A DNA stretch of 63,249 nucleotides, the filler included, from Octopus bimaculoides (Eukaryota), in NCBI RefSeq assembly GCF_001194135.2. It is 6 parts of 5 records of this genome, joined end to end, with 100 filler letters (N's around TTAATTAATTAA, not from the genome) between each part and the next. Parts side by side here need not be neighbours in the genome. Positions count along the whole stretch, not along the records: positions 1 to 19,371 come from NC_068989.1; 5 more parts are not named here. The stretch is one strand, 5' to 3'. Below are positions 9,468-18,890 of this stretch, piece by piece. The notes beneath the pieces were generated by a model. The model had not been told where the DNA came from and did not search any database. It saw only the letters and a list, made by a program, of their open reading frames with translations. The position numbers and the translations under genes were made by a program. Every line of letters begins with the position of its first letter. Within the stretch, counting starts at the first letter, position 1.

Positions 9468-9525
9468 ATGTCGTTACTCTCGTTTGCATTTCTTGCCGTG
9501 ACGCTATTTTTTTCTGGAATTGCAG
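9468..9525 (+). CDS. Candidate first coding exon: signal peptide MSLLSFAFLAVTLFFSGIA
   Basis: ATG, hydrophobic core, small residues at the likely cleavage site, and a phase-1 donor GCAG|GTAGTA. Confidence 0.55.
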
Positions 9526-9597
9526 GTAGTAAATTATCCAGTTGCATTTTAAATACACCTACTTCGCTCCATATAAATTTCTGTTTCTTTGTCCAAG

Positions 9598-9639
9598 ATA
9601 ATCATTTAAAATCTGTGGACTTTCTGACTCTTACATGGT
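9598..9639 (+). CDS. Candidate exon 2 (DNHLKSVDFLTLTW)
   Basis: Strong acceptor TTTCTGTTTCTTTGTCCAAG|, in frame with exon 1. Donor |GTAATA (phase 1); an alternative donor lies 2 nt upstream. Confidence 0.45.
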
Positions 9640-11057
9640 GTAATATATAGTCCTAATTCTCGCACTCTCATCTAGCTGTTTTATTTTGGAAATACAGTAT
9701 CATCTGAACCTAAAATATTATGGTGAAACTTTATCATATTATCTATAATATAAATCATACTTGAAAGAAGGTAGCAAAAACTCAGATAACAGAAAGTGTG
9801 ACTATTTTAGCCAATATTTGTAATCTATCTTATATTGAATTACAAAAAGAAGCGAAGTAGAAATATATCCTCGATGAGGCTATTATATTCATAAGGAGTG
9901 TTATAGTATAAGCATATTATTAGTTTAATATTAGTCAAAATGGGAATCAGTAAGAAGCTTAGGTTAATTTTTCTTAAGAAAGAAATTAATTATGGTTCTA
10001 ATATTCATTACTCTTTGTGAAATGTCTTAGAAAAAAATTGCAAAAATTAGTTTCTTGTAAGAAGAGCAATAACTCAAAACGAATTGTCGTATATATTCCC
10101 GATGCTCATCATCTCATCATTTTACAGTAAACATACGTATATTCGTACGTACGTATGTCTGTATGTACATATGTGTGTGTGTGGGTACGTATATGTATAT
10201 GATATGAAAATGGGTGTTTCATCTATAATGTAAAAGAAAGTTACTGTAGCTATTGAAAGTTCTTGTTTGCACACACAAAATTAAAACTGATCAAAAACTT
10301 ACCAATTACTGTATCATAATTTCAGTATTTTATCACACAGCCATAGTGGTGTCTTAGTTGATTACACCATGAATAAAAAACTGGTATAATTCTGGAGAAA
10401 TTAATTCTCACTGTACTTCACTTACGCCACTCAAATTTTCTCACTCAAGTATTTGCCCACCCTACATTATTACTACAAATGCCATCAGTGGAAGGTAAGC
10501 TCAGCTGACACATCGGCCCATAGCCAAGGAGTGTACTTGTATATCTCATGGGCTTCTACCCGAATGAAAACTTGAATTTGGGAGCAGTTTTATAATGTCT
10601 TGTGAAGTTTCTGTCGGAGGCACCTTATGACATGAACGTACTTTTATACTAATCTCTTACGTGAATCGAACAGAGATACAGCAAACAATGGAAAATAAAC
10701 ACGCTGAATATTGATTCAGTTAATTTCTTCGAACACTTTCCCAACAAATATACAACTAAATTCTTCATTATCGGAACAAATATCATCCTCTGCTTGAATC
10801 TATGTTCAAATGAATATAGAAATCAAGAAATACACCCTAGTTTTTGGTTTCGAATTCAGTGGTGACTGTCTCTTTTAGTTGCGGATTCTTTCATGACTTT
10901 ACATCCAACTTTACTTTTAATTCTCGATCCTTTGACATGTTCACTTCTTAAAGAACAGTAGCGATAAAATGCAGATGATGGGAGAATCACGACAACTACC
11001 GCTTTTCTTTTTTCATTTGGAGGAAATAATGACAGTGGTAGTATTTCGTTGTTGCAG

Positions 11058-11127
11058 ACGCACGTGATACATTAACAGCTGTAACGCCAATGACATCGCC
11101 TAATGTCCAAGCCCATTGTTTCTCATT
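11058..11127 (+). CDS. Candidate exon (YARDTLTAVTPMTSPNVQAHCFS), supplies WSC Cys1
   Basis: TTTCGTTGTTGCAG| ... TT|GTAAGA. Only the phase-1 frame is open; ends in phase 2. Confidence 0.45.
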
Positions 11128-12084
11128 GTAAGAATAGCTACCTGAGCAATGAGGTTTCATAATGATGTTAGCAATTCACATTTGATAGGTACATTTTATT
11201 CGCTGCGAAGGAGATATTAAGTACGAAGCCTTATCAAATACAGTGTTGTTTCTTGCGCTGCTGTTTCGTACTTACCTGTTGAATTCATCTAGACTCTCCC
11301 GCCAAACGTTTCTTTTTCCTTTACCGTTAGCTTCCAGCGTTAGTAGACTCGTGTTTATTTGTTTGTTATCGAATTTTTTACTGTTAGGTTTTTCACATCA
11401 GTTGCTACGAGTTGATTTCTTATGTATGTGTTTCTTGCTTGTTTATTTTATCATTGTGCTTTGAAGTATTACTACTGCTATTAGTTTTCTATTTTTGTGG
11501 GACATTTTATAGATTATATATTATCCTCTAGTATTTTTCTATCTAATTTTGTTTTGTGACGTATGGTATGATGTGTTGCAATAGTTCCCTGTTGTAGATG
11601 CATGATGAGTGTACAAATGGGTGTTGGGTTTGGCAGCTTTCAGTTTTACAGCCATACAAATATATAGACTCCATAAAGTTTCTCATAAATTGAAGTTTAA
11701 TCATAAAAGCCATGCTAATGTCGCAATACAATGCCAGACATTTGACAGCTGATGGAGAATGTTAAATCTTTGTTATGAGAGCCTACCAGTGTATAAGAAA
11801 TGCCAAGTATATTCAGTTCTTGAAAATAAAACTACGAACATATGGACGTACCAAATATTAATTCAGGCACTTTATTGTTTCCCACTAGCTGTAGAAAACT
11901 AGTAAGAAAATGTGAAAAACTAAAGCAAAAAACATAAAAATTGAACAACGTTGTAAAAACTATTCAACATATATACAAGCATGGACATTTTGTCTTATGA
12001 TGCAATTGCTAGTCAGTACATGCTGTTGACAAAGCCCAAAGAGGCAGAAATGTGCATCTAACATTCATATGACTGCTGTTGGAA

Positions 12085-12152
12085 AAGACAGGTGGTGTAA
12101 ACAACAAATGGATGTATTAGTTTAACGCTCGGGAATACAGAAAGTCTTTAAC
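12085..12152 (-). mobile_element. Penelope-type tail fragment
   Basis: Near-identical reverse complement of part of 34490-34565 (TTCCCGAGCGTTAAACTAATACATCCATTTGTTGTTTACACCACCTGTC). Confidence 0.65.
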
Positions 12153-12189
12153 GTTTTGAGTATATGTATATATATATACTTATATATAC

Positions 12190-12252
<63 letters not shown>

Positions 12253-16402: not shown

Positions 16403-16533
16403 TGCCAGTTGTGGTTGTGAAAACTCCTTCATAAGCAGTGTTCAACGTTTTGATAATTTGTGTGATGTCACATGTCAGTCTTCTCCTCCAGACAGATGTG
16501 GAGGTGCAGGTGTAGTATCCGTTTACGATACAG
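16403..16533 (+). CDS. Exon encoding the C-terminal half of a WSC domain (ASCGCENSFISSVQRFDNLCDVTCQSSPPDRCGGAGVVSVYDT)
   Basis: Strong acceptor TTCTTTCTTCCAG| and donor ACAG|GTAAGC. C-x-C...C-x3-C-x7-CGG-x4-SVY-x-T is the typical WSC C-terminal signature. Confidence 0.8.
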
Positions 16534-17129
16534 GTAAGCTATCCAGACATGCTAACGCCGTCGAAAGAAAAGATTTGGCAGTTCTATTTTCACAGTTAGT
16601 ATTCATTCTGTTAGAATGTAGTGGATGGTCAAAATTTATGGACAATTATATTGGTAGATTATAAAATAATGGATCTTAAAAGTGGTTGATGATTGGAGAG
16701 GTGAATGATTAGCATTAAAAAGACAAAGCCTGAGTTTTGGTTATCAACTCTATTTTGGCTGAAGATTTGACTATCAACTCTATTGAGGCTGAAGATTTGA
16801 TTCAATGGCCTTCACAGGTTTTCGCAGACGATTGAGATCGATGCCTAGAAGGTTAAACTTGAGACCCTCTACGATTATAAGAATGTCTTATTTTAGAAAT
16901 CAAGGTCTCGAATTCAGCTTTGAAATACTCATCCATTGAAATATGACTTTAATTGATGATCGATATTCAAAGAGATAAAAATGTTGTGTAGGTGTAAATT
17001 TTGAAAAATACTTTATTTCTAAACCTGAAAAACAAATATGCATTCGCTGTTTTAAACACGTTGATACTAACAACTATCAGCTAAACACTTGGTCGCAAGA
17101 GTTCCTCTGTGTGGTCACTTAAACTACTA

Positions 17130-17290
17130 AATATAGCAACTAAATCACATACTCGATCTTGGAATAGGAGTGAACACATTGGATTATATTGTCGCGCACA
17201 ATCCTATTATCTGAAAATGGTCTAATAACAGATGATGGTTGGAATGTTCTTGAACATAGGTCTTCTACATCAGGGTTCTAAACAAAAAAC
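17130..17290 (+). repeat. Dispersed repeat family E (probable retroposon 3' end)
   Basis: Related segments at about 26550, 34160 (-), 50190, 54250 and 54880 (ACACATTGGAT...ATGG(C/T)TGGAA...CTAAACAAC). Confidence 0.5.
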
Positions 17291-18279
17291 AAAAACAAAG
17301 AGTAACAAAACAGAAAAGAAACATCGCCATCACTAAACAAAGAGCAAAAAAAAAAAAAAAGTATCGCACTCGCTAACATTTTATATGTTAAACTTATAAC
17401 AAGAGTGAAAAAGCCAGTAGAGTCGGAGTGAGTGTGGAAAAGAGTGAGGAAAAGAAAAGAGGGAAAGGGAGGTGCGAAACCGGAAAGAGGGGGAGAGAGA
17501 GTGGGAAGGGGAAGGAAGGAAGGAAAGAAGGAGAGAAATTCAAAGAGACATCAACAACAGAATGGTCTGATCTTCATACCTGTTACTTTTTTACATCAGT
17601 CAATTTCAGGTTTTACATAAAGTTCTCAGCATTACTGGCCAATTTCGTAGTTGTGTCACTATATATAAAAATGAATTATACTATTCTGTGATACCTACTT
17701 ATGTCCAGGCCAACTAGACCGTGTCAAATGTGTTAGTCCTAGATACAACTTAGTCCCAGTGATATAACAGGGACCCGGCTGAAGGTTTTCTACCTCACCA
17801 ATCAAGACTTTTGCATCAAATTTGCAACAAAAGATCATAGCAACTATAACTGCCTGTCATCGTAACTTTATTTATTTTTCATATAATAATTTGTGTTCAG
17901 CTGTGTCACGGTTGGCAGATTTCGAATAAACCAAGCACTAGATCACTTATAATTAGTCTTTATTTACCCCGGAAAGATGGAGAGGTAAGTTGACTCCATT
18001 GGAATTTGAACTCAAAATTTAGAGCATCAACATATTTTAATCTGATGTTTAGTGTTTCTTTCAAGTGGTATTAAGACATGATATGAGAAATATTTGTTAT
18101 TATTGAACCCATTAAATTACTGGTCCTTATTTCATTGATTCTGTATGAAGGAAAGCCAAGTAAAATTCCATGCCTGATGAAAACTAAAACGCTTTAATTC
18201 ACTATACAACAAATTCAGACAACTCTCCCTTTGGCGCGCATGCGCCTAATGAAGAGTCACTCCTAGAGGAAAGATATAG

Positions 18280-18426
18280 GCGCAAGAGTGGCTGTGTGAT
18301 ACGAAGTTTGCTTTGCAATCACACGGTCCGGGTTCAATCCCACTGTGTAGTATCTTATGTAACCCGGCACCGATAAAAACCTTATGAATGAATTTGTTTT
18401 GTGAGATAAAAACTGAAAGAAACCAA

Positions 18427-18481
<55 letters not shown>

Positions 18482-18660
18482 TATCTCTCTCTCCCTCTCT
18501 CTCTCTCTCTCTTTCTATATATACGTGGTGGAAGGGGGAAGGTGTGTATGTAAGTGCGTGTCTTTGTGCTTGTCCCTCATATCGCTTAACAACTGGTGTT
18601 CGACTAAGCCCTTCAAGGTAGTGAACGAACATGTCCGTAGCCCAATGACTGCGCCAGCTA
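18280..18660 (+). mobile_element. SINE family C with an internal (CT)n tract
   Basis: GGCGCAAGAGTGGCTGTGTG...CGGGTTCAATCCCACTG head and family C body. Confidence 0.75.
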
Positions 18661-18839
18661 TATTCAAACCTCAATATACAACTGGTACTCATCTTTTTGA
18701 TCGCTGATATCAATAACACATAATTACTCAACCAATTGTAAGATTTGTACATAAGCTATAAGATGAACAAACAGTGGCAATACATCAGTATCGCTGAATA
18801 TTGCTTAGAAAATAAAATTAATCTGGTTCTGTTTTTCAG

Positions 18840-18890
18840 CCATTCAGACCCGAAAAGTCGATCTTTCTGGAGTAGACAGTGAAGCCAGAG
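18840..18890 (+). CDS. Candidate exon after the WSC domain (AIQTRKVDLSGVDSEAR)
   Basis: TCTGTTTTTCAG| ... GAG|GTATTT. Symmetric phase 1 to 1 and in frame with 16533. Confidence 0.5.

What the first reader, a model, noticed from the sequence alone, without database searches (positions are those of the whole stretch)
9468..18890. Hidden multi-exon gene for a secreted or surface WSC-domain protein
Seen: exons 9468-9525, 9598-9639, 11058-11127, 15575-15640, 16403-16533 and 18840-18890 all have GT-AG boundaries and matching phases (1,1,2,2,1). They join with no stop into MSLLSFAFLAVTLFFSGIA-DNHLKSVDFLTLTWY-ARDTLTAVTPMTSPNVQAHCFSF-YSLSFETDRNFEMCYLLCAGNT-ASCGCENSFISSVQRFDNLCDVTCQSSPPDRCGGAGVVSVYDTA-IQTRKVDLSGVDSEAR. 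This has eight Cys spaced C-x16-C-x3-C-x6-C-x-C-x14-C-x3-C-x7-CGG. Known: WSC is an 8-Cys putative carbohydrate-binding module found in fungal Wsc1 sensors, Kremen, WSCD1/2, xylosyltransferase and polycystin-1. Inference: signal peptide, one WSC domain and a stalk, with no kringle before it, suggests a lineage-specific glycan sensor or receptor. The Cys3-Cys4 spacing is shorter than usual, so an exon may be missing or the domain is divergent. Only 16403-16533 is strongly supported on its own.
Basis: partly seen in the sequence, partly recalled or inferred. Interest (0 to 1): 0.75.

Follow-up and report, generated by a model that had tools for sequence, protein, structure and literature searches.

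The report
Annotated octopus WSC membrane-protein gene, mis-assembled

Summary
Partly right, but not new. Exons 16403-16533 and 18840-18890 are real, with exactly the stated borders, and they do encode the C-terminal half of a WSC domain plus a stalk. They have zero RNA depth. Five RNA runs splice 5270 directly to 16403. In Octopus sinensis they are frameshifted, lack the acceptor, or are absent. About 1.9e9 equally phase-compatible chains exist in that interval. The true upstream exons are 549-643 and 5144-5270. With 5144-5270 the domain passes Pfam's WSC threshold (30.3 against 27.8 bits, model 2-82 of 82) and has the canonical eight-Cys spacing and CGG motif. The spliced peptide is an exact substring (residues 203-346 of 382) of XP_014788108.1, O. 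bimaculoides LOC106882058 (UniProt A0A0L8I918, "WSC domain-containing protein"). The whole protein reads: signal peptide, WSC1, a degenerate Cys-rich module, WSC3, a 24-aa stalk, one transmembrane helix and an 18-aa tail. All six assembly gaps lie in introns and hide no exon of this transcript. Function is untested; a glycan- or ligand-binding surface receptor is the best inference. Only one other related protein cluster was found. Low interest.

The parts
549..643 (+). Coding exon (orthologue's exon 6). It encodes residues 203-233 plus the split codons K202 and V234: LCSCMDTARFLVKCRNKKNDANVYKTTYHEN. This is the C-terminal part of the degenerate middle Cys-rich module.
   Evidence: X1 927-nt contig positions ~575-669. 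Acceptor ttcag|ATTGTG and donor AATG|gtacgg. The tool's alignment from 539 carries 3 mismatches, which are explained by the upstream exon's ...AATCTGCCAA. 94.6% identical to O. sinensis with splice sites kept. Exact match to P0019.
5144..5270 (+). Coding exon (orthologue's exon 7). It encodes the N-terminal half of WSC3, residues 235-275: DVGCFSISSVSIRKQKEITDIIYLADCALYCRKYKYYGYSV (Cys1-Cys3).
   Evidence: X1 contig positions 669-796, depth 358. The loose end before 16403 is window 5241-5270 in X1, X2, X3, X25 and X26. Acceptor gtag|TTGACG and donor GTCAA|gtaagg. 97.9% identical to O. sinensis.
16403..16533 (+). It encodes the C-terminal half of WSC3, residues 277-318: ASCGCENSFISSVQRFDNLCDVTCQSSPPDRCGGAGVVSVYDT (Cys4-Cys8 and the CGG motif).
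   Evidence: Exact coverage by RNA contigs in five runs, with no intronic depth in the organism-B runs. Pfam WSC model positions 48-82. 96.5% identical to O. sinensis, and the exon's three differences are all synonymous.
18840..18890 (+). It encodes the juxtamembrane stalk, residues 320-336: IQTRKVDLSGVDSEAR.
   Evidence: X1 245-nt contig, depth 252, ends at 18890 and runs on into AGAAAAAAAGCAAAGCACTGATATATGCCC, which is not in the window and encodes EKKSKALIYA of P0019. Junction 16533>18840.
644..5143 (+). Intron (phase 1). It contains three assembly gaps (1203-1596, 2619-3451, 4103-4699) and a high-copy repeat at 840-1202.
   Evidence: Direct RNA join 643>5144.
5271..16402 (+). An 11.1-kb intron (phase 2) that splits the WSC3 domain between Cys3 and Cys4.
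   Evidence: Direct RNA join 5270>16403 in five runs. Zero RNA depth over 9362-12077 and 15540-16024.
16534..18839 (+). Intron (phase 1).
   Evidence: Direct RNA join 16533>18840. Only low-depth (5-10x) unspliced signal in X1.
9468..15640 (+). NOT part of the gene's mRNA.
   Evidence: Depth 0 in X1, X5, X6 and X7. In O. sinensis, exon 1 has a 1-nt indel, exon 2 has its acceptor AG changed to CG, and exons 3 and 4 have no counterpart. About 1.9e9 alternative chains exist.

Best explanation
The piece is a 19-kb internal stretch of Octopus bimaculoides gene LOC106882058. The orthologue in O. sinensis has about 11 coding exons over 44 kb. Four coding exons lie here: 549-643, 5144-5270, 16403-16533 and 18840-18890. 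They encode residues 203-336 of a 382-aa protein. The start codon and signal peptide, WSC1 and most of the middle module lie upstream of the piece. The transmembrane helix and the tail lie downstream. Shown: the exon chain, the identity with the annotated protein, and WSC membership of the domain encoded by 5144-5270 plus 16403-16533. Inferred: the product is a type I single-pass surface glycoprotein with a signal peptide (1-21), WSC1 (~26-113), a degenerate Cys-rich module (~131-230), WSC3 (~236-318), a 24-aa stalk, a TM helix (~343-364) and an 18-aa tail with no recognisable signalling motif. It would hold disulfide-locked WSC (PAN/Apple-type) modules close to the membrane, where they bind an extracellular polysaccharide, glycoconjugate or protein ligand. 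With so short a tail it would act as a ligand-capturing or co-receptor/adhesion subunit rather than as an autonomous signalling receptor. Expression is strongly restricted: depth 358 in one RNA library and none in two sister libraries or three deep 2026 runs.
For: Exon chain and junctions: replicated in four runs from four other studies. The frame is open through all junctions. The window-encoded domain scores 30.3 bits on Pfam WSC (cut-off 27.8, E 5e-7, model 2-82 of 82). The spliced peptide plus the RNA loose end is an exact substring, residues 203-346, of P0019 = XP_014788108.1 / A0A0L8I918. Whole-protein Pfam WSC scores 65.8 bits in three stretches with no other domain. Per segment the scores are 44.7, 17.1 and 29.4 bits. 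The WSC1+WSC3 family profile hits the Kremen-1 WSC domain (E 2.6e-4) and the yeast Wsc1 CRD 7PZ2 (E 6e-4) and nothing else credible in PDB. The Cys spacing x22-x3-x13-x1-x14-x3-x7-CGG compares with x21-x3-x15-x1-x14-x3-x7-CGG in ScWsc1 (PMC9024836). TM: the hydropathy maximum is at 346-364, and it is the only confident AF2 helix (pLDDT ~80). The orthologous O. sinensis locus has the same exons, with true exons 91-98% identical. Restricted expression.
Against: Nothing contradicts the gene identity. For function there is no direct evidence. The AF2 model of the ectodomain failed (pLDDT 37), so the four disulfides and the fold rest on sequence only. The middle module is not demonstrably WSC (hhalign probability 0.5%). 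WSC domains can bind proteins, as in Kremen-Dkk, rather than glycans. The signal peptide was judged by eye and hydropathy, not with SignalP. Contig depth is a poor measure of expression, and the tissues behind the coded runs are unknown.
Confidence: 0.95

Rival explanations
1. An alternative promoter and first exon at 9468, plus three cassette exons, give a shorter secreted or surface protein with its own signal peptide and a single, divergent WSC domain.
For: The segments have GT-AG borders and compatible phases and join without a stop, and the first one starts with a hydrophobic, signal-like peptide. The region of reader exons 1-2 aligns to O. sinensis at ~87%.
Against: RNA depth is zero over all four segments in four runs, including X1, where the true exons reach depth ~358. 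All five runs with the exon splice 5270>16403. 87% is the intron background level. In O. sinensis exon 1 is frameshifted, exon 2 has lost its acceptor, and exons 3 and 4 are absent. About 1.9e9 such chains are available by chance. The chimera destroys the WSC Cys3-Cys4 spacing, and Pfam then matches only model positions 48-82.
Confidence: 0.02
2. The gene is as in the best explanation, but the protein works through protein-protein contacts, like the WSC domain of Kremen-1 in the Dkk-LRP6 complex. It would be a co-receptor for a secreted protein ligand, not a glycan binder.
For: The best PDB matches are the Kremen-1 WSC domain. Like Kremen, it is a type I membrane protein with a short tail. The Wsc1 and Kremen structures lack an obvious ligand cavity (PMC9024836).
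Against: There is no kringle or CUB domain, and identity to the Kremen WSC is low (E ~1e-4 only with a profile). No partner is known. Fungal WSC modules bind beta-glucan (literature cited in PMC9024836).
Confidence: 0.25
3. The gene is as in the best explanation, but the protein is a mechanosensor in the style of fungal Wsc1. The WSC head would be anchored in an extracellular matrix or cuticle and transmit force through the stalk to the membrane and tail.
For: The overall order is the same as in Wsc1: signal peptide, WSC, stalk, TM, cytoplasmic tail (PMC9024836).
Against: The stalk is only ~24 residues with 4 Ser/Thr, not the long O-mannosylated Ser/Thr-rich nanospring of Wsc1. The 18-aa tail has no similarity to the Rom2-binding tail. 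There are three modules instead of one.
Confidence: 0.07

Closest known systems
XP_014788108.1 / LOC106882058 / UniProt A0A0L8I918 'WSC domain-containing protein' (Octopus bimaculoides) and its orthologue XP_036362129.1 / LOC118764978 (Octopus sinensis)
   Same: This is the same gene. The window's spliced peptide is identical to residues 203-336 (203-346 when the RNA loose end is included) of the O. bimaculoides protein. It is 95% identical to the O. sinensis protein over 144 aa.
   Different: Nothing differs. The annotation is automatic and the protein is uncharacterised, and no paper in the searched library mentions either locus.
Kremen-1/2 (vertebrate Dickkopf co-receptors; PDB 5FWS, 5FWW)
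   Same: Type I membrane protein with a WSC domain and a short cytoplasmic tail. Kremen-1 is the best PDB sequence match, and all eight Cys and the CGG motif align.
   Different: Kremen has kringle-WSC-CUB. The octopus protein has only WSC-type modules. The similarity is domain-level only.
Fungal Wsc1-type cell-wall integrity sensors (ScWsc1 CRD, PDB 7PZ2)
   Same: Same order of parts: signal peptide, WSC, stalk, TM, tail. The Cys spacing is nearly identical. The family profile hits 7PZ2 at E 6e-4.
   Different: The octopus protein has three modules rather than one, a very short stalk that is not Ser/Thr-rich, an unrelated tail, and it comes from an animal without a cell wall.
Multi-WSC secreted or membrane proteins of other animals (tandem-WSC proteins P0002, P0003, P0005; WSCD1/2; polycystin-1; annelid glycerotoxin with two WSC domains, PMC5336659)
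   Same: They share the WSC module, and the exon peptide hits their repeats at 31-40% identity.
   Different: The architectures differ (4-7 tandem repeats, sulfotransferase, REJ/PLAT and so on). None aligns over the full length; only P0001 and P0004 do.

Membership tests
WSC domain (Pfam PF01822) | Scores above Pfam's gathering threshold over the whole model | tested here: met
The window-encoded domain (5144-5270 plus 16403-16533) scores 30.3 bits against 27.8, model 2-82 of 82. The full protein scores 65.8 bits.
WSC domain (Pfam PF01822) | Eight conserved cysteines with canonical spacing, and the CGG motif | tested here: met
   C238-x22-C261-x3-C265-x13-C279-x1-C281-x14-C296-x3-C300-x7-C308-GG, compared with ScWsc1 C27/49/53/69/71/86/90/98-GG (PMC9024836). 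All eight Cys and the CGG are invariant across WSC1 and WSC3 of both clusters.
WSC domain (Pfam PF01822) | PAN/Apple-type fold locked by four disulfides (C1-C6, C2-C4, C3-C5, C7-C8) | tested here: inconclusive
   The AF2 model from a two-sequence alignment failed for the ectodomain (mean pLDDT 37). Indirect support: the family profile matches the two solved WSC structures, Kremen-1 and Wsc1.
WSC domain (Pfam PF01822) | Binds carbohydrate | not testable with these tools
   This needs glycan arrays or polysaccharide pull-downs with recombinant ectodomain.
Kremen | Kringle domain before the WSC domain and CUB domain after it | tested here: not met
   Pfam finds only WSC in the full-length P0001 and P0004.
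Fungal Wsc1-type sensor | Single N-terminal WSC, a long Ser/Thr-rich stalk, TM, and a signalling cytoplasmic tail | tested here: not met
   There are two WSC domains plus a degenerate module. The stalk is ~24 aa with 4 Ser/Thr, and the tail is 18 aa. Only the signal peptide-WSC-TM order is shared.
WSCD1/2 | Two WSC domains followed by a sulfotransferase domain | tested here: not met
   There is no sulfotransferase hit, and the protein ends 18 aa after the TM helix.
Octopus LOC106882058 orthologue group | Exact or near-exact match to the annotated protein, with collinear exon structure | tested here: met
   Exact substring of XP_014788108.1. The exons map one-to-one onto exons 6-9 of the O. sinensis gene.

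The most novel reading that the evidence does not exclude
The annotated but unstudied protein may belong to a very narrowly distributed, possibly cephalopod-restricted, family of small type I membrane proteins with a WSC - degenerate WSC-like - WSC ectodomain. It is expressed at high level in only one tissue or stage. It could serve as a lineage-specific surface binder or sensor of an extracellular polysaccharide such as chitin-based cuticle or mucus glycans. Only two clusters in 5.8 billion align over the full length, and the second comes from a transcriptome of unidentified origin.
Probability: 0.25. Interest if true: 0.35.

Novelty: already known. Interest (0 to 1): 0.12.

Why it matters
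It matters mainly as a calibration result. It then built a false 5' end from chance GT-AG open frames, when the true partner exon lay 11 kb upstream, outside its search span. Biologically, the gene is an automatically annotated, uncharacterised octopus WSC membrane protein with a narrow phylogenetic distribution and restricted expression. That makes it a modest lead for anyone studying cephalopod surface lectins, but not a discovery.

Tried and rejected

(2) Word-indexed homologue searches found nothing with the 44-aa exon peptide or with the 144-aa spliced peptide. The exhaustive phmmer search with the single-exon peptide was what found the family.

(3) Spliced peptides are not accepted by the exhaustive search or by the structure predictor.

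(4) AF2 on the alignment of P0001 and P0004 gave an unusable ectodomain (pLDDT 37), so no fold search was run.

(5) The hypothesis that the middle module is a third true WSC domain was neither confirmed nor excluded: Pfam gives 17 bits and hhalign gives a probability of 0.5%.

(6) tblastn found no paralogous WSC exons elsewhere in the window.

(7) Rfam gave no hit. Pfam on the longer stray ORFs gave nothing credible.

(8) Literature searches for the locus and protein accessions, for SRR6517992, and for WSC plus octopus or cephalopod found nothing specific.

(9) The tissue identity of run X1 could not be determined because run metadata are coded.

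
Full report
**Observation**

They have AG/GT borders and join without a stop into the quoted 139-aa peptide. This property carries no statistical weight. Between 9001 and 16402 the + strand has 1524 open AG..GT segments of 40-140 nt and 373 ATG-started ones. 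These allow roughly 1.9e9 phase-compatible four-exon chains that enter exon 16403 in frame. That number is an upper bound, because stops created at junctions were not checked. The match covers only model positions 48-82 of 82, all within exon 16403-16533.

**RNA evidence**

In run X1 (organism A, 2015), a 927-nt contig at depth 358 ends with exactly 16403-16533.
- Downstream, it continues into CCATTCAGACCCGAAAAGTCGATC, which is window 18840 onward.
- The same contig covers 5143/5144-5270, preceded by sequence that ends at window 643.
- It also covers 549-643 behind the acceptor ttcag|ATTGTG. The tool's alignment from 539 with three mismatches is a spurious extension into the polypyrimidine tract. 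It fits the upstream exon ending ...AATCTGCCAA, which encodes ESAK.
- A second contig (245 nt, depth 252) covers 18837-18890 and runs on for 191 nt of sequence that is not in the window.

Both junctions flanking 16403-16533 are replicated, with zero intronic depth, in organism-B runs from four other studies. X2, X3 and X25 show both junctions. The X26 contig ends inside the exon and shows only 5270>16403.

**Assembly gaps**

All six N runs of the piece lie inside introns that the mRNA skips in one step: 644-5143 and 5271-16402. They therefore hide no exon of this transcript. The collinear order of the four exons on one strand supports the scaffold's order and orientation. The window is also collinear with the almost gap-free O. 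sinensis locus from 29769 to 46960, and no exon of the orthologue maps into the gap intervals. Each gap is flanked by a microsatellite.

**The true coding sequence**

Exons 549-643, 5144-5270, 16403-16533 and 18840-18890 read through in one frame:

LCSCMDTARFLVKCRNKKNDANVYKTTYHEN-V-DVGCFSISSVSIRKQKEITDIIYLADCALYCRKYKYYGYSV-N-ASCGCENSFISSVQRFDNLCDVTCQSSPPDRCGGAGVVSVYDT-A-IQTRKVDLSGVDSEAR

With the real upstream exon, the domain passes Pfam WSC: 30.3 bits, E 5e-7, model 2-82 of 82. Its cysteine spacing is x22-x3-x13-x1-x14-x3-x7-CGG. That is almost the same as in yeast Wsc1, whose eight cysteines form four disulfides around a PAN/Apple core (PMC9024836).

**Identity**

Word-indexed searches failed. 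An exhaustive phmmer search with the exon peptide then found P0001 at 89 bits.
- P0001's 90% cluster contains XP_036362129.1 (Octopus sinensis LOC118764978).
- The same cluster contains P0019 = XP_014788108.1 (Octopus bimaculoides LOC106882058; UniProt A0A0L8I918, "WSC domain-containing protein").
- The window's spliced peptide, including the ten residues known only from the RNA loose end, is an exact substring (residues 203-346) of the 382-aa O. bimaculoides protein.
- It is 95% identical to the O. sinensis protein.

So the gene is already annotated. The piece holds its exons 6-9 out of about 11, as counted on the 44-kb O. sinensis gene.

Octopus introns are themselves ~86-92% conserved between the two species, so bare alignment says little. 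The details are what count.
- Reader exon 1 has a 1-nt indel in O. sinensis, which is a frameshift.
- Reader exon 2 has its acceptor changed from AG to CG.
- Reader exons 3 and 4 have no counterpart.
- The four true exons (each taken with 30 nt of flank) are 91-98% identical with intact splice sites.
- The three differences within exon 16403-16533 are all synonymous.

**Protein architecture** (sequence of P0019)

| Part | Residues | Evidence |
|---|---|---|
| Hydrophobic N-terminus, likely signal peptide | 1-21 | Inferred, no SignalP run |
| WSC1 | ~26-113 | Pfam 44.7 bits |
| Cys-rich middle module | ~131-230 | Pfam 17.1 bits, model 2-56; hhalign probability 0.5%; no CGG, so membership undecided |
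| WSC3 | ~236-318 | Pfam 29.4 bits |
| Stalk | 24 aa | Sequence |
| Transmembrane helix | ~343-364 | Hydropathy maximum; the only confident AF2 segment, pLDDT ~80 |
| Cytoplasmic tail | 18 aa | Sequence |

No kringle, CUB, sulfotransferase or other domain is present. A profile of WSC1 plus WSC3 from both clusters hits only the two solved WSC structures in PDB: Kremen-1 (E 2.6e-4) and the Wsc1 CRD 7PZ2 (E 6e-4). The AF2 ectodomain model was unusable (mean pLDDT 37, two-sequence alignment), so the disulfide pattern is inferred from sequence only.

**Distribution and expression**

Over the full length, only two clusters in the 5.8-billion-cluster collection are homologous. They are the Octopus cluster and P0004, which is 35% identical over 93% of the length. 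P0004 has the same architecture and comes from the transcript assembly of SRR6517992, whose organism could not be identified. Other hits share only single WSC repeats.

The exon is found in one RNA run of organism A and in several of organism B. It is absent from sister libraries of the same studies and from about 6% samples of three deep 2026 runs. This indicates restricted expression, with the caveat that contig depth is a crude measure.

**Mechanism**

Shown: the gene structure, the WSC membership and the membrane-anchor signal.

Inferred: the product is a type I surface protein that presents disulfide-locked WSC modules on a short stalk to bind an extracellular polysaccharide, glycoconjugate or protein. 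Its tail is too short for autonomous signalling, so it more likely acts as a ligand-capture, adhesion or co-receptor subunit.

Rivals for function are Kremen-like protein-protein co-reception and Wsc1-like mechanosensing. The latter is disfavoured by the short stalk, which is not Ser/Thr-rich.

**Verdict**

The feature is an ordinary, already annotated gene, so interest is low.

Noticed in passing
window 1203-1596, 2619-3451, 4103-4699, 8567-8975, 13777-14390, 16144-16355: Most assembly gaps abut a di- or tetranucleotide microsatellite: AG at 1597-1613, TC at 2598-2618, TG at 4072-4102, AT at 4700-4720, AC/AT at 13687-13776, TC/TA at 16089-16143 and TA at 16356-16390. The gaps are therefore probably unresolved simple repeats. 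All of them lie in introns.
   Followed up: yes
window 840-1202, 5500-5890, 12085-12160: These intronic segments have word depth of 1e5-1e6 in the genomic run X4 and high depth in RNA runs. That points to very high-copy interspersed repeats (transposable elements or SINE-like). They were not classified.
   Followed up: partly
window 12664-13114, 14452-14627, 6974-7096; L002 several places: These segments recur 3-6 times at 68-85% identity within the 64-kb O. sinensis locus, so they are further interspersed repeat families shared by both octopus genomes.
   Followed up: no
window 16544-16811: A 268-nt stretch just downstream of exon 16403-16533, which includes a 30-nt tandem duplication at 16742-16800, has no counterpart in the orthologous O. 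sinensis intron. It is a lineage-specific indel.
   Followed up: no
window 16403-16533: RNA contigs of organism B are 100% identical to the window over this exon and share the flanking-exon sequence. The O. sinensis genome differs at 3 of 131 positions, all synonymous. Organism B is therefore a very close relative, or some runs are mislabelled.
   Followed up: partly
window 549-643 and P0019 residues ~131-230: The middle Cys-rich module keeps the GC...C-x3-C...C-x-C pattern of WSC but lacks the CGG loop and scores below threshold. It may be a decayed WSC or PAN-like repeat that is conserved in both protein clusters.
   Followed up: partly
window 5271-16402: The WSC3 domain is split between Cys3 and Cys4 by an 11.1-kb phase-2 intron. 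The same split, with a 9.7-kb intron, is present in O. sinensis.
   Followed up: yes
window 3637-4102 (+): There is an open frame of ~155 aa before the gap (MIVVLTMTEKLEQRICIKF...). From memory, its start resembles the N-terminus of mariner-type transposases. Pfam gave no credible hit. It is probably a decayed transposon remnant in the intron.
   Followed up: partly
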